Source of the DNA: Chrysemys picta bellii
Taxonomy: Eukaryota
Length of the DNA: 64,000 nt
Assembly (NCBI RefSeq): GCF_011386835.1
Contig: NC_088807.1
Coordinates: 21,576,001-21,640,000 of the forward strand
Direction of reading: 5' to 3'
Position 1 is the first letter of the stretch; each line of letters opens with the position of its first letter. Under the pieces are notes generated by a model, which was not told the DNA's origin, did no database searches, and saw only the letters and a list, made by a program, of their open reading frames with translations. The translations under genes were made by a program, and so were the position numbers. This document shows, in pieces, positions 11,790 to 40,200 of the stretch.

Positions 11790-12060
11790 AGCAGGGGCAG
11801 TGTTGGCACCGGCCCCAGGGCAGGGACTGGCTGGCTCAAGGGTGGGGAATGGGGCCCGGGGCCTCTCCCCTCTAGGGGGCACCGGCTCCCACCCAGCCCC
11901 AGGGCAGGGACTGGCTGGCTCAAGGGTGGGGAATGGGGCCCGGGGCCTCTCCCCTCTAGGGGGTGCCGGCTCCCACCAGGCCCCAGAGCAGGGACTGGCT
12001 GGCTCAGGGGGGCAGGGAATGGGGCCCGGGGCCTCTCCCCTCTAGGGGGCGCCGGGTCCC
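11790..12060 (+). repeat. ~80-86-bp repeat (ccagccccagggcagggactggctggctca...cccctctagggggcgccgg) carrying a CTCF-like core
   Basis: Three tandem copies. Others at 4590-4700, 18790-18849, 19510-19765 (three copies, opposite strand), 41120-41270 and 43570-43690. Confidence 0.8.
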
Positions 12061-12660
12061 ACCTGGCAGCAGGTGCCCTACATCGTTTCTATGCATGCCG
12101 AGTTTGTTGGGCCTCAGCCCTGCTCCCAGGTGCCCCTAGGGCATGATTCCCCCCCCCCACACACACACACACACACACACACCCCCACCGGGAGAGAGGC
12201 CAAGGTCCGCATGGGCCTTTGATACAGAGCCCCTTGTGCCCCTGGGGAAGGACTAGGGGGAGCTATGGACTGGGGGGAAGGGGTCTATGGGGGGGGCGGG
12301 GTAGATAATAGCTGTCTCTTGGAGGGGGGGCTGTCTTTGGATGCAGTTGTGGCCCCTAGTGGCAGGAAATTGCAGCTTCTGCCTCCCCCCTCCCCCCCAC
12401 TCTTTGCTCCACCTTTCTTGTGGTAGAGCGAATGAAACCATCTCCGGGAAGTGGGACCCCCCCGCCAGCACCCCAGGGGACAGTGAGTCTCGGGGGGGCT
12501 CTCAGCTGAGGGATGGGCTCCCCAGGGACCTTCATGGTCTGGTTTGGAGCTGTCCCATCCTTGCCCACGGCGGAGGGGGGAGGCGATTGGGGGCAGCTGG
12601 GGGCCTGCAGCAAGTGCATGGGGGCAGGGGTATGTCTATGTGACCAGACCCCCAACTTGG

Positions 12661-13330: not shown

Positions 13331-13522
13331 CCGTTAGCCCAGCGCTCGCTCTCACCTGCTACCTCAGAGCTCAGACTTTGGCACCATCCGTCCCCATCTC
13401 CTGGGATGAGTCAAAACTTGTCCCCTGGGCGTTACTGGCGCCACTTCCTCATTGTGCAACACGGCGACGCCGTCGGAAACCTGCTGCGGAAATTACAGCA
13501 CCCGGGTCAATGCGCAGGGTGT

Positions 13523-21600: not shown

Positions 21601-24600
21601 AACCCAGCGCCCCTGACTCTCCTCCAGACCCCCCATGGACCCCCCATTTTCCCCTTTCCAATTTCCCGCCCCCACCAAAGTCTTTGGCCCATTGTGGCTG
21701 TGAAACGGGTTTGCCAGCTCCCTGCCTCAGTTTCTCCAATAGCACCATTCATAAATTCAGACACAGATTGAGGTCCCTGTCACACTGGGTGTTGCGTGCG
21801 CACACACACACACACACACCCGTGACTGAGATGTGGGGGGGTCCCCGTCACGCTGCATAGAACCCCCTCTGACTGAGATCTGGGGCGGGGGTCCCTGTCG
21901 TACTGGACGCTGCACAGACCGAGCTGGTCCTGCTTAGGGTCCTGGGGAGTCCCGTTCTCTCTCCCCCCAGCCCCGTCCCCGGGGCGAGCTGACCCCCCCC
22001 CCCACCGCTCTCCGGCGCCCCCGCAGGCCACCCTGAAGAAGTACCAGAGTGAGCACCGGGCCAAGGCGGAGGCCATTGAGAAGTGCCAGGCCGAGCTGAA
22101 GAAACTGCGCAAGAAATGTCAGAACAGCAAGAACCCCCAGAAATACGGGGACCGCGAGGTGCAGGTGAGGGGGAGTGGGGCTGGGGGGGGCATGAGGTGC
22201 AGGGGACGGGGGGGCTGCAGGGGGAGGGTCTCCCGCGGGGTGGGGACTAGGAGGTGCTGGGGAGGGTAAATCTGGTGGGGGGCACTTAATCTGGGAGCAG
22301 GGTCTGGAATAGAGCCGCCCCGAACATGCCCGCACATGAGCCCAACACGCTAAAACACGGGGAAACGCTAACACGCATGGCGCACACGGTGTTCCTGGGT
22401 TGGAATGAGGTAGGCGTGTAATGTACACGCCAATGCGCAGTACATATGTGACAGACACCCACACCCAGGCACATGCGTGAGCACACAGGCACTGGGAAAA
22501 GCCTCTATACCTCCAGGGCTGGCCGACCGGGGGGAGAGGGGGGCAGAAAGGACCCCAGGCCACAACCCCCCGTCTCCTCAGCCCCCCCAAGGGGCCCCTG
22601 GCAGCGAGGGGCAGAGCTTGGGAAAACAATGGGATCGGCCAGGCTCCCGCAGGAGACACCGGGCCGTCACGTCCGGCCGGAAACCGCAGCAGGATGTCAG
22701 CGCCGGAGGCGGGGGGAGGCCGGGGCAGCTTGGGAGCTCCCCCGCCCCACTCCCTGTGGCGCCCCCGGCGGGTAGAGGCGGGCGTTGCTGTCTTGGGAAT
22801 GGTGGCTCGGGGCGCGGGCGGGATCGGGGCCCCGAGGGGCTCGCGGCTCTGAAGGGTTTTAACATTCTTTGGCCAGCTGGTGCCTGGGACCCTAATCTCC
22901 ATAAGGGGCTTTGGATGGATGGATTGGGGGGGGGCGGGGACATACGCTGGGGGGCACCCACATGGGGTGCAGGGGGAGACACAATTGGGGGATGCGGAGT
23001 GGAATAGTTTCTGGCAGGTGTCTCCTGCCCCTCCCCACGTAGTTCTCTGCCCCCCGCCTCTGCTCAAGGGTCTCCCCCCCCCCCCCGCACTGCCTCCCCT
23101 CCCCCCTCATTAGCATGTCAGGCGCCTGCTCCTTCCCCTCCCCCCCGCCCGCTCCCCGCCTTGGCTCTGGAAGGCCCCCCTTTGTCGGCACCCATTGCCT
23201 GGGGAACCATTACTTCGGGGTCACGGCCCCCATTCTACAGGCTGCCAGGGGGAAGGGGGGAAGTGGGGTTGGCAAGGGGTGGTGGTGGTAACCCTTTCCC
23301 CCCCACCAGGGCCTGCTATGGGGAGGGGGGAAGGGGAGTGTGTGGGGGGGTGTTAACCCTTCCCCCGCCAAATCCAATGTGGAATGTCAGGGTCTGATGT
23401 GGGGGTGTTGGGGTCCAATGGGGCGTGTCAGGGTCTGATGTGGGGGGCTATTTGGGGTTTGATATGGGGTGTCAGGCCAATATGGGGGGATTATCTGTGG
23501 TCAGATGCAGGGTTGGTATCTAGGCCCAGCTCTGAAGTGGTGAGGTCTGATATTGGGGTGATTCCCCCCCCCATGCTCTGATGCCCCCTTGGGACTCTTT
23601 CCCCCCCCCCCCCAGTACGTAGAGGTGATGAGTGCCAAGCAGAGCGAGCTGGACCGTTTTGTGGCGGAGGGATACAAGGCTGCTCTGACCGAGGAGCGCC
23701 GGCGGTACTCATTCCTGGTGGATCGCCAGTGCGCTGTGTCCAAGCACTTCAGTGCCTACTATGCCAAGGTGAACTGCCCGCCCCATATCCCTCCATCCCC
23801 TGGGGAGGGGGCACGCACACCCGTATCCCTCTGCCCTGAATCCTTCCACCTGCTGGGGAGGGGGCCACACGCCCCGTATCCTTCCACCCCACATCCCTCC
23901 GTCCCGTAGCCTTCCATCCATTGGGGAAGGGGCTGCAAACCCCATATCCTTCCACCCCATATCCTTACACCCCATATCCCTCCGCCTGCTGGGTAGAGGT
24001 CACGCACTTCCCGTATCCTTCCATCCTGTATCCCTCCGCCCCCACAAAGAGCCCCCTAGTGGGACGTCACCTGCATCCTTCCATCTTGTGGGCCCCACCA
24101 GAGTGGGGGGGTACCTGGTGGGGGGCAGTGCGGATGAGTCCCCAGAGGGCAGCACAGGCCCCATGTTAGGGGGATGTGGGGGAGTGGTGTAGTTCCTATG
24201 GGGCCCTGGTTGGGGGTCGCGCTGTGGACTGGGTGCGGGGGGAGTGGGAGCCCCGTGGAGGGTGGGGGCTCCCCTGGCTGGGCATGTGGCGCAGTCTAGT
24301 GCCCCCCCTCACCCATCTCTGCCCCCTGCCCCGCAGGTGAAGGAGCTGCTGGGGGCCAAGCTGCCCGGCTGGCAGCAGTCCTGCGTCCAGCCCACCCGCC
24401 TGCCTGACCGCGCTCTGGCCCTGGTGAAGCAGACGGCCAACAACCCTGCCGCGCCCGTCATCTCCGACCCGCTGCCCGCCCCCCAGCCCCTGGAGGTGCC
24501 CCCCGAGCTGGCACCCCTGCTGGGGGGCGGCGGGCTGGCCCTCAACCACGTATGTCTCTGCCCACGGGGGATGGAGAGGGGCGCCATTGGCAGAGGGTGG

Positions 24601-27600
24601 GGCCCCTCGGGAAAGACCCGGACTCCTGGGTCCCCTTCCCAACAGGGATGGTGACTTGGGCACTACGGGAGAGGGGTAGGGTCCCCCTGGCACTGACCCG
24701 GACTCCTGGGTCCAGTCCCAAAGGGCAGAGCCCCTGAAACGGCGACTCAGACACCTGGGTCCATTTTCCAAGGGCAGAGCCCCTGGGAGGGTCACCCGGA
24801 CACCTGGGTCCGTTTTCCAAGGGCAGAGCCCCTGGGAGGGTGACCTGGACACCTGGGTCCCCAAACCCAACTGGGAGGGTGACGCTGATCCCCAGTGAGC
24901 AGAGCCCCTCCCCCCGTCTCTCCCTCCGCAGCGCGTCTCACTGCAGGAAGCGACTCCGCTCCCCAACGGCGACTCTCACCGCACCCGGGGCTCCCGTGAC
25001 CTGGGGCACCCGCCCGCCAGCGAGCTCCTCACCGTCCCGCTAGGCCTGCCGGCCCTGCAGCCCGCACCAGCCACGCAGACCCCCCCTCCGCCCAGGGCCA
25101 GCGACGGCTACTCCTGTACCCTGCCCATCCCCCGCAAAGCCTCCGCGGAGACCCGCCTCGCCACGCTCAGTAAGTGCCCGCCGGTGCCCCTCACTCCCGA
25201 CCCGCAGCCCCTGCTAGCCCAGGCTCTGGGCTCCCCCCAGCCCTGCCGGTGCCCCTCACTCCCGACCCGCAGCCCCTGCTAGCCCAGCCCTGGGCTTCCC
25301 CCAGCCCTACCGGTGCCCCTGACTCCCGACCCGCAGCCCCTGCTAGCCCAGCCCTGGGCTCCCCCCAGCCCTACCGGTGCCCCTCACTCCCGACCCGCAG
25401 CCCCTGCTAGCCCAGCCCTGGGCTCCCCCCAGCCCTGCTGGTGCCCCTCACTCCCGACCTGCAGCCCCTGCTAGCCCAGCCCTGGTCTGTGCTGGCCAGC
25501 TCCGACATGTTTACTGCTGGAGCTGAGCCTGGCTGGCTCGTCCCATGTGTGACCCCAGATGGGGGCGTCCCAGCCCTCACTACTTTCCAGCCTCCCTGGC
25601 ACATGGTGCAGGCTCTGTGGGGGATATTTTGGGGGGGAGTGTGACCCCATTCTGGGGGGAAGCTGCCCCCCCACCCCTCCAGGTCTGGGCGACTTGCCCA
25701 GCCTAAGCCAATTAAGAGTCCAGCGCTGAGCGGCTTGTTCCAATTTCGTATCCTGGACTGACCCGGCCGGGGCTGGGACGGGATTGGGGGAGGGGGGGGG
25801 GCTCTGCGAGTTCCTGGCCAGTCACACAGAACCCCCCCCCCCCGAGATCTCCTCTCCCCCCCCAATCCAGCTTTCATCTCTACCGCTGGTTCCCCTCCTC
25901 TGAGCTCCCGCAGGCCCTCTCATGTGTACCCCCGGGACACCCCAAGCCCCCCCCCCGATGCCCTCCTCTAAGATCCCCCCCCACATATCCCCCGTGTGCC
26001 CCTTTCTCAGTCTCTTGGCCCCTCTCCAGGGGCAGGGAGGGGGGGCAATCCCCAGCCTGACTCTCCCTTCTCTTCCCCCACCCCCCAGCAGAGAACAGGA
26101 CCCTGCCGCGGGTCGGGGCGCTGGCCGAGCGGCGCCGGGTCCAGGCCGTGTTCTCCCACGCCGCCGGCGAGAGCAGCACCTTGCTCAACTTCCAGGAGGG
26201 CGACGTCATCGCGCTGCTGGTGGCCGAGGCCCGGGACGGCTGGCACTACGGGGAGAATGAGGCCACGTGCATGTGAGCCCCTCCTGCTTGTGCTAACGAC
26301 TAGCCCCCCCCCTCTCCCACAGCTGGGAGAGAACCCAGGAGTCCTGGCTCCCACCCCCTCTCCTCTCCCCTCCTCTCCTCTCCTCTCCACCCCTTCCACA
26401 GCCGGGGAGAGAACCCAGGAGTCCTGACTCCCGTCCCCCCTCTCCTTTCCTCCCCCAGCAGGGGAGAGAACCCAGGAATCCTGGCTCTCAGCCCCTCCTC
26501 CCCTCCTCTCCCACAGCCAGGGAGAGAACCCAGGAGTCCTGGCTCCCAGCCCTCCTCCCCCACTAGACCCCCCCTCCTCTCTCAGAGCCGGGCATGATGG
26601 ATCCGGGCTCCTGGGTTCCAAGTCCCCGGTCCAGATCTGTGAACTCAGCTGCCCCCTGGGGGGAGGGTCTGTGCGTGTCTCCATCCTGCCTGACCTCTGC
26701 TCCCCCCACCCCCAGGAAAGGCTGGTTCCCCTTCTCGTACACCCGGCCCGTCCCCCCTGCCGAGACCGCCGAGAAACCCCACGGCAGGTGAGCTGGGGGC
26801 TGGGCGTGCCACATGGTGGGAGGGGGGAGGAGGAATAGGGGTGACAGATGGAGGAGGCGGGGCTGGGACTGGGGGAGGCAGGGGGCTGGGAGAGGATGGG
26901 GGGGCCAGGCAGTGGTACTGAGTTGCGGGGAAGGGGTGGGGGAATGGGGCAAGGTAGAGGGAGGGGAGCAGAGCGGGATGGGGGGTGCTGAGCTGGTGGC
27001 AAGATGTGGGGCACAGAGAGGGGGAGATTGGGGCCAGGGTGGGGGGAGTATGGGGGGGCACTGTGTAGCTCCAGGGCCTCGTTTTAACCCCATCTCTCCC
27101 CCCCCACCCCAGTTTTCCCCTGAGCAAACTCAACAGCAGCAGCACGGGGACCCTGGACAAAGTGGGGTGCGTGGCCCCCAGCCCGGAGGGGGGTCACGGG
27201 GGGGCCACCTTGCGCTACGCCCCCTCCCCCCGCTCCAGCACCTTCCGCCAGCGCCCCTATAGCATGATGAACCCCGACCTGTCACAGGTGAGTTGGGGGA
27301 GGAGCTTCCAGGCGAGCGCCTCCCCACTTCTCTGGGCACAGCTCCTCCCCCCACCATCTCTCCTCCTGAGGCCTGGAGCCTGCTGCCCAGCCCTGGGCGC
27401 GCCCCGACCCTCGAGACTCCCCACCCACCCCCCAGCACCCAGCCACGCCTCCAGGGTGCTAGCCCAGCCGGGGGGCCCGTAGCCTCGGGAGCAGTTCCAT
27501 TGCAGTGGCCGGGCACTTCACGTCGATGACCCTCCGTTGGTGGCGCTTTGCCTGCCCACCCCCGGGGTGCCAGGCTGGCCGGGGGCACAGGGGCCAGCAG

Positions 27601-28174
27601 CATGGCACGGAGACAGGGAGCGAATTGGTCGGTTGTCCAGTGCCCCCAAATTACCACCAAGGGGGCCCCACTGAGGAACCCCCCACCCCGTCCTCCTGCA
27701 ATCCCCACCACCAGCTGCCACCTGGGGGCAAGTGTGAGCATTGCAGGGCCAGCCTGGTGATTGCCACGTGCCCCACCCCCTGTGCCCCCCGCCCCATCTC
27801 ACCCTCCGGCTAATGTGATTCTCTCCTTCCTCTTCCCAGTTAGCGAACGAATTTGGGAGCCCCCCGAACTCCTCCCCATCCAGGTGAGAGCAGCGAGGTC
27901 CGCGCCCTGGGGCCCCCACCCCGGGGCTCTAAACCTAGGATTCTCCCCCCTCAATGGCCCTAGTGCCACATTCACCCCCCCCAACCCTCCACCTATCAGG
28001 ATAACCTCCCCCCCGGGCACTAGCACCCAGATTTATGTCCCCCCCCCCCTTCAGCTCCCACTGAGGCTCCATGACCCGTGCCCTCTCTCTCCCCCCCCCA
28101 GGTCTAACCCCTTCGCTCACGTCAGGCTGAAGAGGACGGTGACCAACGACCGCTCGGCCCCGCTGATCCAGTGA
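15680..28174 (+). CDS. BAIAP2/IRSp53-like protein (I-BAR/IMD, partial CRIB, SH3, WH2-like C-terminus), 544 aa, 14 coding exons
   Basis: Exons are 15680-15727, 18686-18761, 19807-19893, 20988-21049, 21436-21507, 22027-22164, 23616-23768, 24337-24549, 24932-25169, 26089-26272, 26716-26787, 27113-27287, 27840-27883 and 28102-28174. All junctions are GT-AG, phases are consistent and the total is 1635 nt. The protein reads MSRSDEVNRLTESVYR-VILDQFNPGLRSFVTMGKSYQRALSGVTVAAKGYFDALVKLGELAS..., with VISDPLP (CRIB-like), SH3 RVQAVFSHAAGESSTLLNFQEGD...GWHYGE...GWFPFSYT, RQRPYS, and SNPFAHVRLKRTVTNDRSAPLIQ*. Confidence 0.95.
17400..17900 (+). repeat. C/T-rich low-complexity repeat (ctgtccatccgtcccccacccct)
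   Basis: Degenerate tandem copies in BAIAP2-like intron 1. Confidence 0.75.
18031..18120 (-). mobile_element. Penelope-like element terminal fragment
   Basis: ggcaccttaaagactaaccgatttatttgggcagaagctttcgtg is the reverse complement of the terminus seen at ~63850-63925. Confidence 0.75.
18150..18550 (+). repeat. ~60-bp repeat (cccgtatacccagcccc...caccccagaggggccatgtcccagc)
   Basis: About six copies; related copies at 40650-40760, 43030-43150, 45760-45820 and 57310-57440. Confidence 0.7.
18850..19505 (-). mobile_element. Solo LTR (656 bp) with TG...CA ends and 5-bp target-site duplication GCCCC
   Basis: Starts tgtcacggagt and ends gcgtctca. GCCCC occurs at both 18845-18849 and 19506-19510. 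Internal AATAAA on the minus strand (19122-19127). It splits a copy of the ~86-bp repeat. Confidence 0.85.
19510..19765 (-). repeat. Three tandem copies of the ~86-bp CTCF-like repeat
   Basis: Unit cctgagccagccagtccctgccctggggccggatgggagccggcgccccctagaggggaaaggcccc...; period 86. Confidence 0.85.
25176..25483 (+). repeat. ~60-bp minisatellite (same family as 12661-14800) abutting the BAIAP2-like exon 9 donor
   Basis: Five copies. Confidence 0.9.
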
Positions 28175-29349
28175 GGCCCCGGGCACCCGCCGATCGCCCC
28201 CTGGGGGAGAGATGCCAGGAGCCCCCCGCTCGGGAAGGACTGGGGAACTGGCGGGGGGCCTCCCCCCTATGCAGCCCGCAGCTCCGTCTAGTGGCTGCTT
28301 TGCAGAAGAGCATCTCAACAGCCGGGCTCGGGCCGTATCACGCAGCGGGAGGGTTCGGGGTTCGAATCCTGCCGGCGATGCCTGGAGTGGGGGGAGCGGG
28401 AATGGAGCTGGGCCCCGGGGAGCCACAGGGTGGGGGAAGGGAGGGGGAGAGGCTGACCCCCGAGATAGAAATGCCTCCTGAGGGCTCTGCTATGGGTTAC
28501 GTGTGTATCTGTCCGTCCCCCCTTGCACCCCTCTGTCATCTCCCTACACACATCCATCCCCTCTGCACTCCTCTGTCTGCCCCCAGGCCCCCCTCTATCC
28601 GTCTGTCCTGTGCACACATCCGTTCCCCTGCCCACCCCTCTACCCATCGGTCCCAGCTCCCCCAGGGGGGCTGCTACGCCCTAGCATTTCACCAGGCCTT
28701 CGGAGGAGCCCGAGGCCCTGCCCTTCCCCCCTGGGCTCCAGCCCCCCTGCTTCCACCTGGGAGCTCTGCCCAGCCGACCCGCCAGAGCCAGCCGCCTGGG
28801 GGAGCCCCTCACCCCCTGCAGGGCCCCCCGGTAGCGCTGCCCGGATGTGGGGAGCCCAGAGGTTCGCCATCCACCACTGCCTCGGGCCATTGTCCCTGCA
28901 GGGTTCCCGGCCGGAGCGTCCCTCCTCAGGGAGGTGAATTGCCCCGCGGCAGGTGGCATGTAACCGGGGGCAGGTGGCTAACAGGAGGCCGGTTTTTAAG
29001 CCCGGCTTCCGTGCCAGGCCAACGGGGTGAAAGTCGAGGGCAGAGCAGAAGGCGTCCAGAGGTGGGTGAAGGCGGGTCGGTGGGGAAGGGAAATCCCTGT
29101 CTCGCCCAGCGGCTGGAATCCGAGGGGACAACCGACGTGTGGCCAAGGGGGTGGGTGGGTCTAGCGTCCTTGAACAAGGCTCTGAAGCAAAGCCGGACGG
29201 GTCCAGGGGGAAGGGGGTGGTTAAAAGACAGGGGACAAAGCGGAAAGGGGCAGTTTTCAGACCGGAGAGCGGTAGATGGGGGGGCCCCTAGGGTCTGGGC
29301 TGGGCAGCGTACTCAGAAAGGCAAACGGGGCGAACGCTGAGCAAACACT

Positions 29350-30020
29350 TGCAGACGAGACAAACTGACTCCGGCTCGTTAAGTCCAAAGCACCCGGCGA
29401 AGTGCCCCCAAAAGATCTCCTCGAACAGGGGCACTGGGCCATGAAACGTGGGGTTGAGAAACATGACACTGGAAACCGTCATCCCAGACGGACCTACGCC
29501 AGGAAGGGATCTAGATGAGCAGGTACCACCCGAGACCGAGATGGCGGAGTCGGGATCGTTCGCTGCAAACGGCAGGTAACAGGAGGTTAGGAACCGTGAG
29601 GAAACGGGGGAAGAATCGGACAGACAACACCCTAGTGCCGCTCTATCAACCCAGGGCGCGCCCACCCCTTGAGTACGGCGGGCGGTTCGGGTCGCCCCAG
29701 CTCCAAACAGAGCTGTTGGCGTTGGGAAAGGTGTGGAGAAGGTCAGAGAAATGATGCGGGGGTGGAACAGCTTCTGCTGAGGAGAGACGAAAAGGACGGA
29801 CACCGTTCAGAGACGGTGAAGGGGGATGTGAGAGAGGGCTGTGAAATCGGGACGGGGATGGAGACGGGGAACGGGGAAGTGCTAGTTACCCCTTCACGTG
29901 AGGTGAGAACCAGGGCTCAGCCGATGAAATGAAAACAAACCGACGGCAGCACCGTCAACCTGAGGAACTCCCTGCCGGGGGATGCTGGGAAGGGCGAAAG
30001 TCGAACGGGGTTCGAGAGTG
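29350..30020 (+). mobile_element. Degraded CR1 RT 3' fragment
   Basis: Remnant translation (e.g. RKRGKNRTDNTLVPLYQPRARPPLEYGGRFGSPQLQTELLALGKVWRR) resembles the CR1 C-terminal IRKGIENKTENIILPLYKSMVRPHLEYCVQFWSPHLKKDILELEKVQRR (from memory). Confidence 0.75.
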
Positions 30021-30494
30021 GGTCCAGCACTGGTGGTCACGGGGGCAACCCAGGCTCTGGGTGTCCCTAAACCTCTGCCTGCCCAAAGCCGAGAGCGGCC
30101 GATGGGGGCGCTCATGCGACAGTCGCCCTGTTCTGTTCATTCTCCATGACGCAGTGGGTCCTGGCCACTGGCGGCGACAAGCCACTGGGCCGGCGGGACC
30201 CTTGGTTGGCCCCAGCGCGACTGTTCTTCCCTGGTCCTCAGGGGCCCGTTGGCTGTGTGGTTCCTCCGTCAATCAGGGTCGCTTCCAGCTGCCCCTTTAA
30301 CACCCTGTTCATCCCACCCCCCGCGGTCCATGGCCCCACCCCCATGGCACCAGCTCTGTCCCGAGAGCAGCTTTGTAACCCTTCAGCCCCCACGGGGGAG
30401 CCGCGCAAATCACAGAGGGAAACTGAGGCAAACATGGGCCTCAAAAATATTACAGCAAATTTCCACTTCCTCATGCCATCCATCAATACGATTT

Positions 30495-31030
30495 TAGGTA
30501 TGCGTCCATCCATCCCTCCACATCCCCTCTATCCATCCATCCAGCCCCCAACCCTTGTATCTATCCATCCATCTTCCCCCCGTACCCCCTCCATCCATCC
30601 CCCAAGCCCTGTATCTATCCATCCATCTTCCCCCCGTACCCCCTCCATCCATCCCCCAAGCCCTGTATCTATCCATCCATCTTCCCCCCCATACCCCCTC
30701 CATCCATCCCCCAAGCCCTGTATCTATCCATCCATCTTCCCCCCGTACCCCCTCTATCCATCCCCCAACCCCTCTGTCTATCTATCTGTTCATCCCCTGC
30801 CCCTCTCTCCATCCATCCATCTTCCCCCACACCACCTGTATATATTTAACCAGCCATCCCCCAACCCCTGTATCTAACTATCCATCCATCCCTTCTTCCA
30901 CACCCCCTCTATCCATCTTACCCCCATCCATCCCCCAACCTCTGTATCTATCCATTCCTTCTTCCACACCCCCCTCTATCCATCCCTCCCAGCACACCCC
31001 GAACAGCTGTCTGTCTGTCCACCACCCATA
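30495..31030 (+). repeat. ~53-bp C/T-rich tandem repeat (tatccatccatcttccccccgtaccccctccatccatcccccaagccctg)
   Basis: Four clear copies plus degenerate flanks. Confidence 0.85.
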
Positions 31031-31435
31031 GCTCTGTCCATTATGTGTCCACCTTTGCTCTATGTCCGGCCCTCTCCTGCTGACACAAGTTGCCTGGGAT
31101 GGGAACAACCCCGGACACCCTGAAAAGTGCCTTGTCTGTCCCCAGCCCCACAGCTGGGCTACCTGCCGGGGGTGCGCTGAACTCTATGACCCCTCTTCTC
31201 TCCCCCACCCCGCCAGACTATGGCTGGAGGACGCTGTATTCAGAACTGCATCAAATAGAACCATGGATGCCCCCCCCAGGGGAGTGCAGCACCCCCTGCT
31301 GGGCACATGGGGGGGGGCAGCACCAGGCTGTGAGCTGGGGGGGGGGGAGGGCTCTGTTACAGCCTTGGTGTGACGGTGGGAATTACACCTAGACTGATAC
31401 TAAACTGTGTGTGTGTGTGTGTGTGTGTGCAGCTG

Positions 31436-32390
31436 TCTGTGGCGCCCCCTGCTGGAGGGGCCGGGCCCTGCGCTCTGTGTGTGTCCCTGGCGCCCCCTGC
31501 TGGAGGGGCCGGGCCCTGCGCTGTGTGTCCCTGGCGCCCCCTGCTGGAGGGGCTGGGCCCTGCGCTCTGTGTGTGTGTCCCTGGCGCCCCCTGCTGGAGG
31601 GGCCGGGCCCTGCGCTGTGTGTGTGTGTCCCTGGCGCCCCCTGCTGGAGGGGCCGGGCCCTGCGCTGTGTGTGTGTCCCTGGCGCCCCCTGCTGGAGGGG
31701 CCGGGCCCCGCGCTCTGTGTGTGTGTCCCCCTGGCGCCCCCTGCTGGAGGGGCCGGGCCCTGCGCTCTGTGTGTGTCCCTGGCGCCCCCTGCTGGAGGGG
31801 CCGTGCCCCGCGCTGTGTGTGTGTCCCTGGCGCCCCCTGCTGGAGGGGCCGGGCCCTGCGCTCTGTGTGTCCCTGGCGCCCCCTGCTGGAGGGGCCGGGC
31901 CCTGCACTGTGTGTGTGTCTCTGGCGCCCCCTGCTGGAGGGGCCGGGCCCTGCGCTGTGTGTGTCCCCCTGGCGCCCCCTGCTGGAGGGGCCGGGCCCTG
32001 CGCTGTGTGTGTCCCCCTGGCGCCCCCTGCTGGAGGGGCCGGGCCCTGCGCTGTGTGTGTCCCCCTGGCGCCCCCTGCTGGAGGGGCCGGGCCCTGCGCT
32101 GTGTGTGTCCCCCTGGCGCCCCCTGCTGGAGGGGCCGGGCCCTGCGCTCTGTGTGTGTGTCCCTGGCGCCCCCTGCTGGAGGGGCCGGGCCCTGCGCTCT
32201 GTGTGTGTCCCTGGCGCCCCCTGCTGGAGGAGCCGGGCCCTGTCCTCTGTGTGTGTCCCTGGCGCCCCCTGCTGGAGGGGCCGGGCCCTGCGCTGTGTGT
32301 GTGTGTCCCTGGCACCCCCTGCTGGAGGGGCCGGGCCCTGCGTTCTGTATATGTCCCTGGCGCCCCCTGCTGGAGGGACGGGCCCTGCGT
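31436..32390 (-). repeat. Minisatellite of 20 x ~48 bp, each unit containing a CTCF-consensus motif CCAGCAGGGGGCGCC and a variable (GT)n spacer
   Basis: Motif starts (ggcgccccctgctgg on +) counted at about 31441, 31489, 31533, 31583, 31633, 31681, 31733, 31781, 31829, 31875, 31923, 31971, 32019, 32067, 32115, 32165, 32213, 32261, 32311 (variant ggcac) and 32359. Confidence 0.95.
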
Positions 32391-32463
32391 TCTGGGTGGG
32401 TACAGGGGGTGATGGGGCAAGCCCTTCTGTAGCTTGGACAATGCTGCCTCTGACCCCAATATT

Positions 32464-32469
32464 AATAAA
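32464..32469 (+). terminator. Candidate poly(A) signal AATAAA of the BAIAP2-like gene
   Basis: First AATAAA/ATTAAA I could find on the + strand after the stop at 28174. Confidence 0.45.
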
Positions 32470-32765
32470 GTTTAATTTAAATCCCTCCCTGAGGCCTCAC
32501 TGAATACGGGGGGAGCCTGTCTCGTCCCTTCTACCCGCTCTGTTTGTCGCTGCATGCATCCTTCCAGCCATCCCCCCCATGTACCCCACACCTCCCCCCA
32601 CGTACCCGCTCCATCCCGCTAGCCCATACAACACAGCACTCGACCCCTCCATCTGTCGCCCCACATCCTCCCCCCTCACACACCTCGCTCCCCCAAACCC
32701 CACCGCCATCCATGTGTCCAGCCTCCCCCATGACTCGCTGGCTCGCGGGTAGAAGACACTTGCGT

Positions 32766-32788
32766 TTTAATATTCACTCTTTTTTAAT
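32766..32788 (-). terminator. Candidate LMTK3 poly(A) signals (two ATTAAA)
   Basis: tttaat at 32766-32771 and 32783-32788 on +, in an AT-rich patch ~1.5 kb after the LMTK3 stop. Confidence 0.45.
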
Positions 32789-34263
32789 CTCTTTGTTCAT
32801 TTTGGCAAATCAGGAGCAGGCCGAAGGCGGCGCCGGGCGAGACGCCAGACGTCTCCCCGTGCCCACGTATTTACAGACCTGGCCTTGTTTGGCAGCTGCC
32901 TTGGGGGGAGGGGCTTGGTTCTTGGGGGGGCAGGTGGATTTCCCCCCCCCCCAATGACAAACTGATCCAGAAACGTGTGCTGGAGGATGCCGGTGAAATC
33001 CAGGCCCACTTCTGACACAGGCTAGATAGGGCTGGGCAAGGGGGCGGGACACCGGGGTAGAGGGACCCATGGATCTGATCCAGGTGGGCAGGGAGGGGGG
33101 CTGGACACTGGGGTAGAGGGACCCATAGGTCTGATCTGGGAGGGAGGGGGCAGGATACTGGGTAGATGGGCCCCCTATGTTCCATTCCCTGCCCCACTGA
33201 GTGAGCCAGTCCCTCATCCTGGGCCCAGATGGGAGCTGGTAGTCCCTAGAGGGGAAAGGCCCCTTGCTTAACCCCATGTAACCCCAATGGGCCAAAGGCA
33301 GGGGGTGGGCCCCCAGGACTAGAAAATACACCCAGTGACCCTCCCCTGCAACAGGCTCTGTAACCCCCCCCCCCCCCCGACTCCATCAGGTTCCCAGTAT
33401 AAACTAGTGATGCCCCCCCTCCAGTGCCGGTAATAACCCAGCAGCCGCCTGCACCAGCCCAGGGTCTCCGCTCAGCCCCCAGTACCAACCAGTGAGCGTC
33501 AGACCTTTTAGACAAACCTTCTTCCTGTCCCCCGCCCACCTTCATTCCCCCTCCCTGCTGAATCCCGGGGCCCCAGCTGATCGCCAGCTGCAGGTGGTGG
33601 GGGCTCCATCCTCAGTGCACATCCTGGGGGGGGCACAAAGGTGTCTGTATAACGCCCCCCCCTTCTCCATCTGTCCATCCGTCAGGCGGCGTCTGGTGCC
33701 AAGAGGGGGAAGCGGGTGGCAGCTTTGGGGCCTACATTCCACAGCGGGGGGGGGGCCCCATTGCTGATGAGTTATGGGGCTTTCCCCCCCTTTGTTTGAG
33801 ACACAGAGTTAAACCGGTAGGGGGACCAATCCCAGCCCCCCCTGCTCTGGGGGGGGCAGTCTGAGCCCCCCATCCCGATACATAGCTCGCTGCCCCTTGA
33901 GGTTGGATTTGGCACAAGACAGTTTTGACAGCAAACTCCCGCGTGGGGGGAAGGGGGCAGAGAGGGGCACGGGGGGGGGGGCGGGTACATTCAGCAGCCT
34001 GGCTGCCCCCATCAGCTGAGTCACTGTAAAAAAATTGTCCAGAGAAGCGAGTCCTTGTGGGGACGCTCGGGGGGGGAGGGATCCCCAAAACGCTGGTCAT
34101 GCCGCCCCCCTCCGGCCGGGCGCCAAAAAGGAGTCTCTGTGTCCCCCAGAACATGCCTGGCGCATGCGTCTCCCAGTCAGGCCAGGGGGTGAGGGTGCGG
34201 GGGGGGGGCAATGGCCCAGCGCCATCCCATGGAGTTCCTGATTGCTGGGGGCAGGTCCCCGCC

Positions 34264-37200
34264 TCAGTTCTCAATGGGGTCTGGAAGAGAAGGAGAGAGG
34301 AGCAGAAGGACAGAGCAAAAAGACCTGGATCAGCCCCATGGACCCATCACCCCAGTTCCCTGCCCCCAGATCACCCCCATGGGCCCATCTACCCTGGTGT
34401 CCTGCCTCCTCCCTGCCCCCAGATCACCCCCATGGGCCCATCTACCCTGGTATCCTGCCTCCTCCCTGCCCCCAGATCAACCCCATGGACCCATCTACCC
34501 TGGTATCCTGCCTCCTCCCTGCCCCCAGATCAACCCCATGGACCCATCTACCCTGGTATCCTGCCTCCTCCCTGCCCCCGGATCAGCTCCATGGGCCCAT
34601 CTACCCTGGTATCCTGCCTCCTCCCTGCCCCCAGATCACCCCCATGGGCCCATCTACCCTGGTATCCTGCCTCCTCCCTGCCCCCGGATCAGGGCCCATC
34701 ACCCAGGTCTCCCGTCTCACTCACTGGCTGTGGGCACCAGCTCGGTCTCGCGGGGGGCCAGGTGGGGCTCGAGGGCAGGGGAGACGGTGAAGCGGGAGAA
34801 GCGCAGGGCGTCCATCAGGCTGGGCTCCGCCCCCTTGGCCGGGAGTAGCGCGGGGGGTGGCGTTGGGGGGGCCCCCGAGCTGGGGTCCGTCACCATTGAG
34901 ACGAAGGACGGGTTCTGGGCCATCAGTGGGAAGTCGTCGTCCCATTCGAAGCTGCCACCTGGGGGCAGGGGGAGGGTGAGAGGGGGCGTGGCCAGCCCCA
35001 CCCCACTGCCAATGCCCCTTCCCCCACTGGTCGGCACAGCCAACGCCCCCTTCCCTTGGGGATATCTGGCTTGTATCTAGCCCCTCCCATCTCCTCTTGA
35101 GCCCCCACCTCCCTCTGGCTCAGCTCCCTCCTCCCCCCACCTTGGGGCACCATGGCAAGGGGGCGTCGACCAGCAGCTGCTGTTTATGGTGTATGCAAAC
35201 GAGCATTTTAAAATATGCAAAACGAGCCCATGAAATAATTGGTGATGGCTTGGCCCTGCCCACCCCCCGGTAGCCACTCCCACCCCCCGTGGCGTGGGGC
35301 TCACTGAATCCGTCGGCGGGTGGGAAGGCCTCGAGGGCAGGCTGCCCCGCGGGGCCCTGGGTGGTGCCGCCCTCGCCCTCTGGGCCGCTCTGCGAGCTCA
35401 GCTCGTTGGTGGGCGTCTCCTAGGAGCAGATGGGGGAGAATTAGTGTGTTGGCCCCGCCCCCCTGGCCTGGCCCCACCCCCTTCCCATCACCCCCACACC
35501 CTGGGTTCCTCCCTATTCTTTGTCCCCGCCTTCCTACACCAGACTCCACCCCCTGCTCTCTTGGCCCCGCCCTCCATCCCCCAGGCCCCGCCCTTGTCCC
35601 CCAGTCCCCACCCTCACCTGTTCAAAGAGGTAGACGGTGACGCAATCAAACAAGGACACGACCTTGCGGTTCTGGTCCACCCCCTGTCCCCTGGTGCCCG
35701 CCCCATGCCCCAGGCCCCGCCCTCACCTGGTCGAAGTGGTAGACGGTAACGTCGTTGAAGAAGGTCACCATCTTACGTTTCCATTCCCCGTTCCTGGGCC
35801 TTGACCCATCCCTCAGGCCCCGCCCCCATCCCACAGGCCCCGCCCCCATCCCACAGGCCCCGCCCCAGGCCCCGCCCTCACCTGGTCGAAGAGGTAGACG
35901 GTAACGTCGTCGAAGAAGGACACCATCTTGCGTTTCCGGTCCAGCTCGGCAGCCTCCTCGGCCGAGCGCGGGGACTTGAGCAGCCCGCGCAGGTTGCGCC
36001 CATCATCCGAGTCGCTGACCACAATGGGGACGCCCCCGACACCCGGTGCCTCCTCATCCTCCTCCTCCTCGCCCGGCCCCGGCGCCCCCCGCCCGGCCCC
36101 CTCCTCCTCCGGCGCCAGCCCCCCACAGCCCTTCCGCCCCCCCGAGCCGGCGAAGGGCTGCAGGCTCAGCGGGGGCAGCGCCAGCGACAGGCGCGAGACC
36201 TTGGCTGCAGGCGGAGACGGGACAGGGGGAGAGAATGAGGGGGCAAAGGTCAGGGTAGAGAGGCAAAGGGAGAGAAGGGTGGAGGTGAAAGTTCAAGGGT
36301 CAGAGGGGGTGAGCACCCCTGTCCCCCATCCCTGCCGCCGTCCCCGTCTCCCCCACATCCTCTGTCCATCCATCCCCCCCATCTCCCGGCCTCCATCATC
36401 ATCACCCACATGCTCCATCCATCCCTGCCACTGTCCCCACCGCTCCCCTATCCTCTGTCCATCCACCCCCAGTCCTCTGTCCATCCCCGCACATCCCCAG
36501 TCCTCCATCCATCCCTCCGTTCACCCCCCACACACACATACCTCCCGGTCTCCATCCATCCCTCCATCCATCCCCCACACCTCCTGGCCTCCATCTGTCC
36601 CCACCCCCATCCTCCATCCATCCCTGCCACTGTCCCCACTGCCCCCCCATCCTCAGTCCATCCACCCCCAGTCCTCCATCCATCCCTCTGTCCATCCCCC
36701 CACATGTCCCTTCCTCTGTCCGCAGAGGATACCCCTCTCCCTGGACGATCCCTCTCCTGTCCTTCCGACAGCCCCTCCTCTCCCCAGATGGTCCCCAACT
36801 CTTCCCCAGATGGCTCCCCCTCCTCCCAGTTGGTCCCCAATCCTTCCCCCAGACGGCTCCCCCTGCCCCCAGATGGTCCCTGCCCCCTCCCTCCGATGGC
36901 ACCCCCGACCCCTGGCATCTCCCTACCTTTGATGTCCTCACTGCCTGGGCTCCCTGCCGTGCTGAAGTCCAGGTGGGGCTGCGGCTGCTCAGAGGCTGGG
37001 TTGGCCCCCTCGGGGCTGGGGACAGGGGCCTCCCCGCTCGGCTCCGGCACCCCCTGGCCGTCCAGCTGCCCTTCCTCGCTCTCTGCCCCCTCCTCCTCTT
37101 CCTGGGGCGGCCCATCTGCCACCTCCCCGCCGCCCCCTTCCTGCTCGTCTCCAGAGCCCCGGGCCCCCTCGGGCTCCAGGGCCCAGAGCCGGATCACGGC

Positions 37201-40200
37201 CTCCTCCTTGGCAGCTGGGGCCCCGGACGCCAGGGTCCCCAGGTCCCGGTGGTTGCAGAGCAGGTTGCGGGTGATGTTCTCCCGCAGCGACACCAGCAGC
37301 TGCTCCTTGGACACCTGCACCACGAAGCCGGCCTCCAACTTGGCCGGCGCCGGCTGCCCCCCGCCTTGCCCCGCCGCCGGCTCCTCCTCCTCCCCCCGGC
37401 CCCCCTCCGCCTCGCCGTCCGAAAAATAGGCCGAGTCCCGGTGGGTCGTGGCCAACCCCCGCCCTGTGCCCGCTTCCTCCTCGGCCCCCGGCGTCTCCTC
37501 CGACAGTGTCAGGTCGCTGGTGGACTCCGAGATGGGCGTGGGGGGCAGCTGGGCGGCATCTCCTTGCCCGGGCGGCTCCCCGTCCTCTTCCTCCTCGGGC
37601 TCCCGGACGAGGAGCTCCGGGGAGAAGGTGCTCTCCGTCTCGTAGCCGCTGTCGGGGAACTTCTGGCCCGGCGAGGAGAAGCGGGAGGCTGGGCTGCAGC
37701 CCTCGGAGGAGCTGGTGTTGGAGGGGAGATCCAGCGAGTCCCCGGAGTCCAGCGGGCCCCTCCGCCGGCCCACTGGGGCTGGGCCAATCTCCAGCCTGGC
37801 CGCGAAGCCGTCTGCGGCCTCGGGCACGATGGCGATGGTCTCCTCGTCGGCGCTCTCCGCCAGCGTGGCCAGGGGCGGGATCTCCACCGGCACAATGACG
37901 CTGCAGCAGGTGGCGGTCAGGCCGGGGAAGGGCGAGCCCGGCGGCCGCCCGGCCGCCCCCCGCTTGGGGTAGTCCTGGAGTTCGTAGCTCACCACGGCCG
38001 TGCCCATCAGTGGGTCGTAGAACGCCGAGGGAGGGGGCGGCACCCCGGCCAAAGGGGGTGGGGCGAGCGGCCCGGCCCCGCCCTCTCCGGCCCCGGCGGG
38101 GCCCTCTCCCAACAGGATGGGGCAGTCGGACAGGGAACCCCGCTCCACCTTGAGGGAGGAGTCGTCCTCGGTGCCATAGCTGTCGCGGTGGGGCCGGGGG
38201 ATGGGGGCGTGGTTGCTCCAGCCACTCACAACCTCCCCCCGGCCCGGGGCGCAGCGGCAGCGCCCGCCCCGGCTGCAGAGCGGGCAGAGCAGGGGGTTGC
38301 GGCGCCCGTCCCCGCCGCTGCTGGCGTCCTCCCCGTCCGTGCTGCCGGCCGAGCTCTGCTCCTCCATCAGGGAGGGCTCCCGGTCCCAGGGGGGCGAGGG
38401 GCGGAACTCCGAGGGGTCCCCCGCCAGCGTCTCCCCGGCCCCCCGCTCCTCCAGCCCCTCGCAGTCCCAGCCACGCTGCTGTTCCTCCAGCTCCTGGTAC
38501 ACGTGGAGCAGGGACTCCCCCAGGAAGATGCCCCCCGGCGCCGGATCCGTCAGCGAGGTCTCCTGGATCTCAGCCCGGAAGGGGTTGGCGCTGCGCCGGG
38601 CTGGCTCCCGAGACACCGAGATGAAGGGGTTGGTGGCACCAGGGGCCCAGCTGGCCGGCCCCTCCGGCAGGAGGTGGGGGAGGTGGTGGTGGGCCGGGGG
38701 CGGGGGGCTGCCCCGGATCTCTTCGATGGGGTCCCAGTCGGAAGGGAAGAGGGGCTCTGGCGGGGAGCCGGGCACCCCGTATTGGCGCTCGTAGACGGGG
38801 CTTGGGGTGCCGACGGTGCCCTCGGGCCCTTCCCCCTCGCCGTGCTCCTCCAGCCGGATGTAGTACTCGCTGCTGACCGAGGGGCTGCGGGCGCTAATCA
38901 CTGGGACCACGCTGGGCGTCTCCAGGCTCTGCCGTGCTGGCGCCTCGTAGAAGGGGTTGGCGCCAGGCACGGCCAGGCCGCCGTTGCTGGAGGGGGTGGC
39001 CCCGGGGGCCGGGCCGGCCTTCCAGCGCCCCAGCCGGGCCTTCTCCCACATGTACTCGAAGTTGAGCCCCCGGCTGCTCTCGGTGACAGTGAGGACGTCG
39101 TCCAGATCGGCCCCCTGGAAGCCATCCAGCAGCGGGTAAGCCGAGATCTCCTCCGAGCGGCGCCGGTGTGGGGGGGAGGCGGCCGGCGAGCGCTTGGGCT
39201 TCAGGGCGTTCCAGCGCCACTCAAAACTTTCCTCCGCCTGCGCGTGGCAGCGCTCCGTCAGCAGGTAGGTCAGCTGCAGGTGCAGCTCCTCCAGTGTGGG
39301 GCGCTGTGGCGCCGGCAGCCAGCATGACTGCATCACCTCGTACCTGCAATGGGAGGGAGAGGGGGCGGTCAGGGCAGGGAGGGACAGAACAGTCAGAGAA
39401 CAACAGTCGGAAAAAGAACAGCTGGAGAAGTGGAATAACCACCGGAGAGATAGAGACAAGAGTCGGGAATAAGGCAGCTGTAGAGACTGAAGAACAGCCA
39501 GAGAGACACAGAAGGACCAGCAGAAAACAACAGCCGGAGAGACAGAGAAACAGCTGGAGAGAGGTGAAAGAACAGTCTGAAAACAACTGCCAGAAAGAGA
39601 CAGAACAATCGGTAAACAGACAGAACAGTCAGAAAGTAACAGCCAAAGATACAGAAGAACTGTCAGAAAGAGGCAGAAGAACATCCAGAAAAAAAATCAG
39701 AGAGAGACAGACGAACAGTCAGGGGGAAAAAAACAGCCTGTCAGAGAGAGAGAGAAGAACTGCTGGAGAGAGAGAAAACAGTCAGGAAATAACAGCCAGA
39801 GAGAACAGCTGGAGAGAGAGGCAGAAGAACAGTAAGAAAATAACAGCTGTAGAGACAGAAGACCAGTTGGTGACAGAAGACAGAAAAAATCAAGAGAGAC
39901 AGAAAAAAACAGTCCGAAAATAACAGCCAAAGAGACAGAGAAGAACAGTCAGAAGCATCAGCTGGAGAAACAGAAGTCAGAAAGAGCAAGAGGGGAAAAA
40001 ACAGCCAGAGACAGAAGAACAGCCAGAAAAAAACCCCAAGAAAAGTAGAAAATAACATCTGTAGAGACAGAAAAACAGTCGGAAATGGAAGAACAGTCAG
40101 AAAAAAACACTCAGAGAGAGGGAGGCAGAGGACCAGTTGGAAAACAACAGTCAGAGAGAAAGAAGAACGGTCAGAAGAGAACAGCCGGAGACACAGAGCA

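What the first reader, a model, noticed from the sequence alone, without database searches (positions are those of the whole stretch)
31436..32390. Tandem array of 20 same-orientation CTCF consensus sites between two convergent genes
Seen: 20 units of ~48 bp, 19 with the exact core CCAGCAGGGGGCGCC (minus strand) and one variant. Almost all unit variation is in the (GT)n spacer while the motif is nearly invariant. The array ends ~75 bp before the candidate BAIAP2-like AATAAA (32464) and ~380 bp from the candidate LMTK3 ATTAAA signals. Established: this is a top-scoring CTCF core containing a CpG, and clustered CTCF repeats (DXZ4, FIRRE, H19 ICR) act as strong, methylation-sensitive boundaries. 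Inference: a compact VNTR 'super-anchor' that could block cohesin, separate the two genes, aid termination of convergent transcripts, and vary in strength with copy number or methylation. I know of no description of such an element in turtles.
Basis: partly seen in the sequence, partly recalled or inferred. Interest (0 to 1): 0.8.

Follow-up and report, generated by a model that had tools for sequence, protein, structure and literature searches.

The report
Ancient CTCF-motif minisatellite in turtle 3'UTR
Twenty head-to-tail copies of a 48-base unit, each holding a near-perfect docking site for the genome-folding protein CTCF, lie in the tail of a turtle gene. Hard-shelled turtles have kept 15-21 copies, probably for about 100 million years, which suggests but does not prove a role as a one-directional chromatin barrier.

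Summary
Window 31440-32398 is a 48-bp x 19.9 minisatellite with 19 exact copies and one variant of CCAGCAGGGGGCGCC, all on the minus strand.

- The array is not intergenic. It lies in the transcribed last exon (3'UTR) of the plus-strand BAIAP2-family gene, 66 bp before that gene's only canonical AATAAA and about 370 bp beyond the LMTK3 poly(A) signals.
- The core CpG is at core position 12, where methylation barely affects CTCF. CpG decay shows the array is germline-methylated.
- Copy-number polymorphism within the species is untested.

New findings:
- The window matches Chrysemys picta. The array is orthologous in Malaclemys, Gopherus, Mauremys, Caretta and Dermochelys (15-21 units).
- Carettochelys and Emydura carry only about 2 degenerate units, so the array expanded in Durocryptodira.
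- Across 108 units, a 14-bp block (CCCTCCAGCAGGGG) varies 5-25 times less than the flanks.
- That pattern does not track CTCF information content, and a neighbouring non-CTCF minisatellite has the same phylogenetic distribution.

Verdict: an old, constrained minisatellite that is most likely a multi-site CTCF platform. Binding and insulation are unproven. The scan's first readers flagged at least 8 similar arrays elsewhere in this genome; none has been checked.

The parts
31440..32398 (-). 48-bp minisatellite of 20 units. On the minus strand each unit reads (AC)n-AG(AG)CGCAGGGCCCGGCCCCT-CCAGCAGGGGGCGCC-AGGG. The CTCF-type core is on the minus strand.
31287..31305 (-). Single-copy, co-oriented CTCF-like site (TGCCCAGCAGGGGGTGCTG, 18.2 bits), about 135 bp beyond the array. 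It is present in all six durocryptodiran species.
31406..31429 (+). (TG)12 microsatellite abutting the array edge, the same dinucleotide as the unit's variable spacer.
28102..32490 (+). Last exon of the BAIAP2-family (IMD+SH3) gene. The acceptor AG is at 28100-28101 and the stop TGA at 28171-28173. The 3'UTR runs through the array. The end coordinate is inferred from the poly(A) signal.
   Evidence: Spliced RNA contigs in 4 runs. Contigs are continuous from 28098 to 31469.
32464..32469 (+). AATAAA, the only canonical plus-strand poly(A) signal between 18000 and 44736. It lies 66 bp after the array and is conserved in Emydura as TTTATT in the LMTK3 orientation.
32766..32788 (-). Two ATTAAA poly(A) signals of LMTK3. 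One RNA contig ends at 32734.
36448..39684 (-). ORF containing the large LMTK3 exon.
   Evidence: 94% identity to Malaclemys LMTK3
30536..31000 (+). Neighbouring TCCATCCATC-type minisatellites in the same 3'UTR. They have no CTCF motif and were used as a control.

Best explanation
This is an old minisatellite in the distal 3'UTR of a BAIAP2-family gene. It grew from a roughly two-copy proto-repeat beside an (AC)n microsatellite in the ancestor of hard-shelled cryptodiran turtles, and it has been kept at 15-21 units since.

Each unit is a high-scoring CTCF site, and all point the same way (minus strand, the LMTK3 sense strand). The most likely function is a dense multi-site platform for CTCF, and possibly its paralogue CTCFL. 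Adjacent motifs are 48 bp apart, which falls in the under-100 bp class known to be co-occupied.

By the convergent-motif rule, minus-strand sites stall cohesin arriving from lower coordinates. The array would then be the downstream anchor of loops that enclose the BAIAP2-family gene. It would also be a roadblock about 350 bp past the LMTK3 cleavage site, keeping the two convergent transcription units apart.

Shown: the array, its motif strength and orientation, its 3'UTR position, its age, its copy-number stability, and constraint on a 14-bp block.

Inferred: CTCF occupancy, cohesin stalling, and any effect on termination or insulation.
For: - Motif: 19 units score 21.2 of 26.0 bits and one scores 17.8, all co-oriented.
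- Orthology: arrays of 17, 21, 17, 15 and 18 units occur in Malaclemys, Gopherus, Mauremys, Caretta and Dermochelys, with alignable flanks. Carettochelys and Emydura have only about 2 degenerate units at the same place.
- Motif retention: of 108 units, 91 score at least 17 bits and 107 at least 14.
- Constraint: the block CCCTCCAGCAGGGG differs from consensus in 0.4-1.7% of cells per species. Unique flanks differ in 3-13%, and upstream non-CpG unit columns in up to 20%. Core non-CpG columns average 1.25 variant events against 4.47 for non-core columns (Mann-Whitney p = 0.0003).
- Ongoing turnover: species-specific higher-order duplications have periods of 381, 388, 352 and 174 bp, yet copy number stays within 15-21.
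- Spacing: adjacent motifs under 100 bp apart are co-occupied by CTCF/CTCFL (PMC5973138). CTCFL orthologues are reported in turtles (PMC7471279).
- Persistence of the selecting factor: a factor with unchanged specificity over about 100 million years fits CTCF.
Against: - No binding, cohesin or Hi-C data were available for any turtle.
- Variability per position does not follow CTCF information content (Spearman rho -0.13 to -0.19, p > 0.4). Low-information positions 1-3 and 8 are invariant, while informative positions 14-15 vary. Observed variants are only slightly milder than random ones (P = 0.07).
- About half of the Gopherus array carries weaker cores of 14-18 bits.
- CpG decay indicates germline methylation, and the array lies in a transcribed gene body, where methylation and elongating polymerase tend to exclude CTCF (PMC12408068).
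- The adjacent non-CTCF minisatellite has the same distribution (Durocryptodira only), so persistence alone is not special.
- The window holds dozens of GC-rich minisatellites.
Confidence: 0.45

Rival explanations
1. This is a neutral GC-rich minisatellite. It was seeded by slippage next to an (AC)n tract and persists because turtles evolve slowly and arrays homogenise. The CTCF match is a by-product of a GC-rich unit and has no selected function, even if some protein binds.
For: - The window is crowded with GC-rich minisatellites (114 TRF rows).
- The neighbouring GGATGGATAGATACAGGG array arose in the same lineage and also persists.
- CpG columns decay as expected for methylated, unprotected DNA, and CpG o/e equals the window average.
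- Variability does not correlate with CTCF information content.
- Weaker core variants have spread through half of the Gopherus array.
Against: - The 14-bp block varies 5-25 times less than the unique flanks in every lineage, and less than the other non-CpG columns of the same units. Mutation context alone does not give such a gap.
- Copy number stays at 15-21 despite lineage-specific block duplications.
- The control array is more decayed than this one: 63-79% matches against 77-90% in Gopherus and Caretta.
Confidence: 0.3
2. The selected function is at the RNA level. The array is part of the mRNA's 3'UTR just before the poly(A) signal, and it offers about 20 repeats of C-rich/YGCY (CUGCUGG, CGCU) and (UG)n elements. 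These could bind RNA-binding proteins that control stability, localisation or 3'-end processing.
For: - The array is transcribed. Spliced RNA contigs run from the last-exon acceptor to the array edge at unchanged depth. The only canonical poly(A) signal lies 66 bp after the array.
- The conserved block extends over positions that carry little information for CTCF.
Against: - Three units fold no better than shuffled sequence (z = 0.31).
- The (UG)n part is the most length-variable part of the unit, about 4 to 24 repeats in Dermochelys.
- No RNA-binding motif was tested. The protein assignments come from memory only.
Confidence: 0.12
3. The conserved block serves another DNA-level process. One option is a different conserved zinc-finger factor with a CAGCAGGGG-type site (ZIC-like). 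Another is a recombination-promoting minisatellite core (GCTGGAGG resembles the classical 33.6 core) that propagates itself by biased conversion.
For: - The invariant block, CCCTCCAGCAGGGG, is shifted 5' relative to the CTCF core and excludes its 3' third.
- Block duplications show active unequal exchange.
- Both motif resemblances are recalled from memory, not tested.
Against: - A PRDM9-type hotspot motif would not stay constant for about 100 million years, because PRDM9 specificity turns over fast (established knowledge).
- No ZIC matrix or recombination data were available here.
- The full 19-bp window scores close to the best CTCF sites in the window.
Confidence: 0.08

Closest known systems
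DXZ4, FIRRE and ICCE CTCF-binding macrosatellites of the mammalian X (PMC3491370, PMC6125249, PMC5899087)
   Same: Tandem arrays in which every unit carries a co-oriented CTCF motif. The orientation of the array sets the direction of long-range contacts. Units diverge quickly while the CTCF motif is retained.
   Different: Those units are kilobases long, the arrays span tens to hundreds of kb, and CTCF binding is specific to the inactive X. Here the unit is 48 bp, the array is 1 kb, it sits on a small GC-rich autosomal region inside a 3'UTR, and occupancy is unknown.
Clustered CTCF sites (2xCTS) co-bound by CTCF and CTCFL/BORIS (PMC5973138)
   Same: Adjacent motifs are less than 100 bp apart, a spacing that lets two 11-zinc-finger proteins bind side by side and exclude a nucleosome.
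   Different: 2xCTS elements have two motifs, usually at promoters or enhancers with active marks. Here 20 motifs lie in a gene tail, and there are no chromatin data.
Human VNTRs whose units contain CTCF motifs, e.g. the HRNR repeat (PMC10234305)
   Same: [quoted passage not shown]
   Different: The HRNR repeat is coding, its motifs match a weaker two-core model (P < 1e-4), and its length is polymorphic. The turtle array is non-coding, near-consensus, and stable in length across species.
Classical GC-rich minisatellites
   Same: A 48-bp GC-rich unit (76% GC) with strand asymmetry, head-to-tail copies, degenerate edge units, higher-order duplications, and an embedded dinucleotide tract.
   Different: Such loci usually turn over fast and are rarely orthologous across families. 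This one is orthologous across three turtle superfamilies and has a strongly conserved 14-bp block.
CTCF sites that control poly(A) site choice and are switched by gene-body methylation (PMC12162027)
   Same: CTCF motifs inside the 3' part of a transcription unit, close to a poly(A) signal.
   Different: That mechanism needs a proximal and a distal poly(A) site flanking the CTCF site. Here no canonical signal lies upstream of the array in the 3'UTR, and the core CpG is at the methylation-insensitive position.

Membership tests
CTCF binding site (sequence level) | High-scoring match to the 19-bp vertebrate CTCF matrix, including the invariant C5, A9, G10 and G13 | tested here: met
   Exact units score 21.2 of 26.0 bits, using the matrix recalled from memory. 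107 of 108 units in six species score at least 14 bits.
CTCF binding site (sequence level) | Upstream 10-bp motif (CTGCAGTTCC-like) about 8 bp before the core, found at strong insulator sites | tested here: inconclusive
   GCAGGGCC sits at the canonical distance but matches only 6 of 10 positions, and it is no more conserved than the flanks.
CTCF binding site (functional) | Occupancy by CTCF and cohesin in vivo | not testable with these tools
   No turtle CTCF or RAD21 data were found in the literature search.
CTCF-site tandem arrays acting as directional anchors (DXZ4/FIRRE type) | Every unit carries a CTCF motif in one orientation | tested here: met
   All 20 units are on the minus strand. 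The same holds in the five other species.
CTCF-site tandem arrays acting as directional anchors (DXZ4/FIRRE type) | The motif is retained while the rest of the unit diverges | tested here: inconclusive
   The 5' two-thirds of the core plus 4 upstream bases are nearly invariant, but the 3' third varies. The pattern does not follow CTCF information content.
CTCF-site tandem arrays acting as directional anchors (DXZ4/FIRRE type) | Long-range contacts or an insulation boundary at the array | not testable with these tools
   No contact maps could be read here.
Methylation-sensitive CTCF boundary (H19 ICR type) | A CpG at a core position where methylation blocks binding (position 2) | tested here: not met
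   Core position 2 is followed by A. The only core CpG is at position 12, where methylation has at most a marginal effect (PMC6222495).
CpG island / germline-unmethylated element | CpG observed/expected above about 0.6 | tested here: not met
   The array is 0.41 against 0.43 for the whole window. In sea turtles it is 0.21-0.26.
2xCTS clustered CTCF/CTCFL sites | Adjacent motifs less than 100 bp apart | tested here: met
   Spacing is 44-52 bp in the window and 41-88 bp in the other species (definition).
VNTR (copy-number polymorphic minisatellite) | Different copy numbers among individuals of one species | not tested
   Only one assembly of this species was available (L009 is identical to the window). 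RNA contigs show a one-unit skip and a two-unit back-joint, but these may be assembly artefacts.
Minisatellite | Head-to-tail units of 10-100 bp, far beyond chance | tested here: met
   TRF score 1530, 19.9 copies, period 48.

The most novel reading that the evidence does not exclude
Turtle genomes may hold a class of selectively maintained 'CTCF minisatellites': kilobase arrays of 40-60-bp units, each a consensus CTCF site in one orientation, acting as high-occupancy, directional cohesin barriers at gene ends. On this reading the present array is one member, kept at 15-21 copies since the durocryptodiran ancestor. Array length would be under stabilising selection as a way of setting boundary strength.
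Probability: 0.25. Interest if true: 0.8.

Novelty: new variant of a known kind. Interest (0 to 1): 0.55.

Why it matters
Tandem CTCF arrays are known as large X-linked macrosatellites in mammals and as pairs of sites. A compact 1-kb array of 20 consensus sites is a different scale. This one is orthologous across turtle families that split about 100 million years ago, and part of its motif is under measurable constraint.

If the array is bound, it offers a natural system for asking how barrier strength depends on the number and spacing of CTCF sites. It could also show how CTCF coexists with transcription through a 3'UTR, and how convergent genes are kept apart.

The scan's unchecked notes list several similar arrays in the same genome. 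The phenomenon may therefore be genome-wide, and it could be tested with public assemblies and Hi-C data.

Tried and rejected
- RNA secondary structure: three units fold no better than shuffles (z = 0.31), so I dropped a structured-RNA reading.
- CpG island or protected unmethylated element: rejected, because CpG o/e is 0.41, the same as the window.
- Methylation switch at the core: rejected on motif grounds, because the CpG is at position 12.
- CTCF-mediated choice between proximal and distal poly(A) sites: unlikely, because there is no canonical signal upstream of the array in the 3'UTR.
- PRDM9 hotspot motif: rejected, because a fast-evolving specificity cannot explain a block that stays constant across six species.
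- Upstream CTCF motif: only 6 of 10 positions match and it is not conserved.
- CTCF-shaped selection test (variability against information content, and score loss of observed against possible substitutions): no clear signal.
- Ascertainment check: anchoring units on the non-core part gave the same unit counts, give or take one. All long spacings are explained by (AC)n length, so no core-less units were hidden.
- Alligator LMTK3 look-up found no record, so there is no archosaur outgroup.
- In Platysternon the expected place appears to fall in an assembly gap (2295 N in the scanned stretch). I left it unfilled.
- Pfam on long ORFs near the array gave nothing relevant.
- No paper on CTCF binding or CTCF-motif repeats in turtles was found.

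Full report
**Observation.**
- Tandem Repeats Finder reports 31440-32398, period 48, 19.9 copies, 91% matches, score 1530.
- The 15-mer CCAGCAGGGGGCGCC occurs 19 times exactly and once with one mismatch. All copies are on the minus strand, 44-52 bp apart. With up to 2 mismatches the window has 26 matches against 1.7 expected.
That is as good as the best single sites in the 64-kb window.
- A 21st co-oriented site (18.2 bits) lies about 135 bp beyond the array at 31287.
The neighbouring 19-mer carries substitutions in 7 of 20 units and an indel in one more.
- The window as a whole is 63% GC and crowded with GC-rich minisatellites (114 TRF rows). A tandem repeat here is not unusual in itself.

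**Genes and transcripts.**
- The 1078-codon minus-strand ORF at 36448-39684 is the large exon of LMTK3, 94% identical to Malaclemys LMTK3.
- In every turtle locus fetched, LMTK3 is followed tail-to-tail by a gene of about 544 codons with IMD and SH3 domains, a BAIAP2-family gene.
- I laid contigs of four transcriptome-like runs of a closely related sample on 28000-33900. In all four runs a contig carries upstream sequence that matches window 27855-27879 exactly.
- That sequence is followed in the genome by a GT donor at 27884. It joins to an acceptor AG at 28100-28101. The runs are therefore RNA, and 28102 starts the last exon.
- The reading frame ends at TGA 28171-28173. Contigs then continue at similar depth to 31469, the edge of the array.
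- The only canonical plus-strand poly(A) signal between 18000 and 44736 is AATAAA at 32464-32469, 66 bp after the array. In one run depth stays at 15.6 up to 32530 and then falls to about zero.
- The array is therefore the last quarter of a roughly 4.3-kb 3'UTR, not intergenic DNA.
- The LMTK3 ATTAAA signals lie at 32766-32771 and 32783-32788 on the minus strand, and one RNA contig ends at 32734. The two convergent cleavage sites are only about 250 bp apart. The array begins about 350 bp past the LMTK3 cleavage site.

**Comparative evidence.**
- I fetched orthologous loci through exact LMTK3 proteins. The Chrysemys picta record has an array identical in unit number and spacing to the window, so the window is this species.
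- Malaclemys has 17 units, Gopherus evgoodei 21, Mauremys mutica 17, Caretta 15 and Dermochelys 18. All are co-oriented, sit at the same place, and have alignable flanks.
- In Platysternon the expected place appears to fall in an assembly gap, which I left as it is.
- Carettochelys (Trionychia) and Emydura (Pleurodira) have no array. Between the same flanks they carry about two degenerate units.
- In Carettochelys one of these is a strong site (CCACCAGCAGGGGGCGCAG, 20.2 bits). In Emydura neither reaches 11 bits, for example CCTCCAGCGAGGGGCAGCA.
- The array therefore grew from a short proto-repeat beside an (AC)n tract, after Trionychia split off and before sea turtles and testudinoids separated. 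From recalled turtle time trees this is of the order of 100 million years. I did not compute a date.
- Species-specific higher-order duplications (periods 381, 388, 352 and 174 bp) show that turnover continues, yet copy number stays at 15-21.
- One control weakens the argument from persistence. The neighbouring GGATGGATAGATACAGGG minisatellite has no CTCF motif, but it is likewise present in all durocryptodirans and absent from the two outgroups. It is, however, more decayed.

**Constraint.**
- I aligned 108 units from six species in register. Checks with a non-core anchor and with spacings showed that no core-less units were missed.
- A 14-bp block, CCCTCCAGCAGGGG, is almost invariant: 0.4-1.7% of cells differ from consensus per species.
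- By comparison, 400 bp of unique flank on either side differ from the six-species consensus in 3-6% of positions in emydids, 7-10% in Gopherus and Mauremys, and 11-13% in sea turtles. Non-CpG columns upstream in the same units differ in up to 15-20% in sea turtles.
- Counting each species-by-state variant once, core non-CpG columns have 1.25 events per column against 4.47 for non-core columns (Mann-Whitney p = 0.0003).
- The pattern is not shaped like the CTCF matrix. Low-information positions 1-3 and 8 are invariant, while informative positions 14 and 15 vary: GGGGTCGCC and GGGGTTGCC fill half the Gopherus array and GGGGGCTCC a third of the Caretta array.
- The correlation of variability with information content is nil (rho -0.13 to -0.19, p > 0.4). 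Observed substitutions cost only slightly less score than random ones (-2.5 against -3.5 bits, P = 0.07).
- Something conserved reads or needs this block. CTCF is the best candidate but is not singled out by the data.

**Methylation.**
- The most variable columns are the CpGs, changing to TG or CA. This includes the core CpG, which is altered in 14-24% of units.
- The single-copy flanking site shows the same TG/CA split between lineages.
- CpG observed/expected is 0.41 in the array, the same as the window (0.43), and 0.21-0.26 in sea turtles. The array has behaved as germline-methylated DNA, not as a protected island.
- The core CpG is at position 12 of the 15-bp core. Methylation there changes CTCF binding only marginally, whereas position 2, which is not a CpG here, is the sensitive one (PMC6222495).
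Methylation also does not argue against binding.

**Likely mechanism.**
- The most economical reading is a dense, one-directional CTCF platform. Motifs less than 100 bp apart are known to be co-occupied by two CTCF/CTCFL molecules (PMC5973138), and CTCFL orthologues are reported in turtles (PMC7471279).
- Cohesin retention depends on the CTCF N-terminus and hence on motif orientation (PMC6995019). By the convergent rule (established knowledge), minus-strand motifs form the right-hand anchor of loops.
- The array should therefore stall cohesin coming from the BAIAP2-family gene side. Plus-strand partner candidates in the window are at 13520 and 13664.
- Lying just past the LMTK3 cleavage site, it could also act as a roadblock that limits read-through into the partner gene.
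- These steps are inference. A caution applies: genic methylation and transcription are reported to keep CTCF out of gene bodies (PMC12408068).

**Rivals.**
- A neutral minisatellite with an incidental motif remains plausible (0.30), for the reasons above.
- An RNA-level role (0.12) is possible because the repeat is part of the mRNA. However, it shows no special fold (z = 0.31), and its (UG)n part is the least conserved.
- Another conserved DNA-binding factor or a self-propagating recombination core (0.08) cannot be excluded. A PRDM9-type motif is unlikely to stay fixed for this long.

**Relation to known systems.** The nearest known things are:
- the DXZ4, FIRRE and ICCE macrosatellites (PMC3491370, PMC6125249, PMC5899087);
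- 2xCTS elements (PMC5973138);
- human VNTRs whose CTCF-site count scales with length (PMC10234305).

The turtle array shares co-oriented motif-per-unit architecture with the first, the spacing with the second, and the minisatellite scale with the third. It differs in its 48-bp unit size, its position in a 3'UTR, its age and its copy-number stability. I found no description of CTCF-motif minisatellites or of CTCF binding maps in turtles. I class it as a new variant of a known kind, with function unproven.

**Other arrays in this genome.** First-stage notes of this scan list at least eight other co-oriented CTCF-motif arrays elsewhere in the same genome. These are unchecked AI notes that I could not test. 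If they are real, the phenomenon is genome-wide, and a census would be more informative than this single locus.

Noticed in passing
window 11812-12063(+), 19506-19767(-), 41118-41286(-), 43539-43704(-); singles near 4595, 4680, 18823; also L001 14147-14287 and 16599-16756, L002 19108-19276, L003 18659-18790 and 21482-21639: A dispersed repeat of about 85 bp forms 2-3-copy tandems. It carries a second CTCF-like core, CCCCTCTAGGGGGCGCCGG (13-17 bits). Copies lie in LMTK3 introns of other turtles, so it looks like a turtle-wide interspersed element that spreads CTCF-like sites.
   Followed up: partly
window 8487-11174 (-): An 895-codon single-exon ORF with many LRR_8 repeats and a C-terminal TIR domain. 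It is a Toll-like receptor gene.
   Followed up: no
window 46607-47743: A purine-rich 44-bp minisatellite of about 26 copies with a 127/171-bp higher order. It is the highest-scoring tandem repeat in the window.
   Followed up: no
L002 about 24000-31800 and 32158-33935, against window 36326-36721 and 35574-35945: In Gopherus evgoodei two short repeats within the LMTK3 gene span are greatly expanded. They have 3-4 copies in the window but span roughly 7.5 kb and 1.8 kb in Gopherus. This roughly doubles the gene span to 25 kb.
   Followed up: no
window 30536-31000 and the orthologous places in L001, L002, L003, L006, L007, L008: TCCATCCATC/GGATGGATAG-type minisatellites occupy the same 3'UTR in all durocryptodirans and are absent in Carettochelys and Emydura. 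Two unrelated arrays therefore expanded in one UTR in the same lineage.
   Followed up: partly
L001-L009 (whole loci): The order RPS9-like gene, LMTK3, then a convergent BAIAP2-family gene is conserved in most turtle loci fetched. From memory, the human paralogues AATK-BAIAP2 and LMTK2-BAIAP2L1 are also neighbours. If so, the tail-to-tail pairing may predate the vertebrate genome duplications.
   Followed up: no
window 28000-33900 against RNA contigs of runs X1, X2, X10, X13: All four runs share the same roughly 2% of base differences from the window in the 3'UTR (for example 28132 G>A and 28755 A>C). The sampled animals appear to differ consistently from the assembled individual, as a subspecies or a close relative would.
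   Followed up: no
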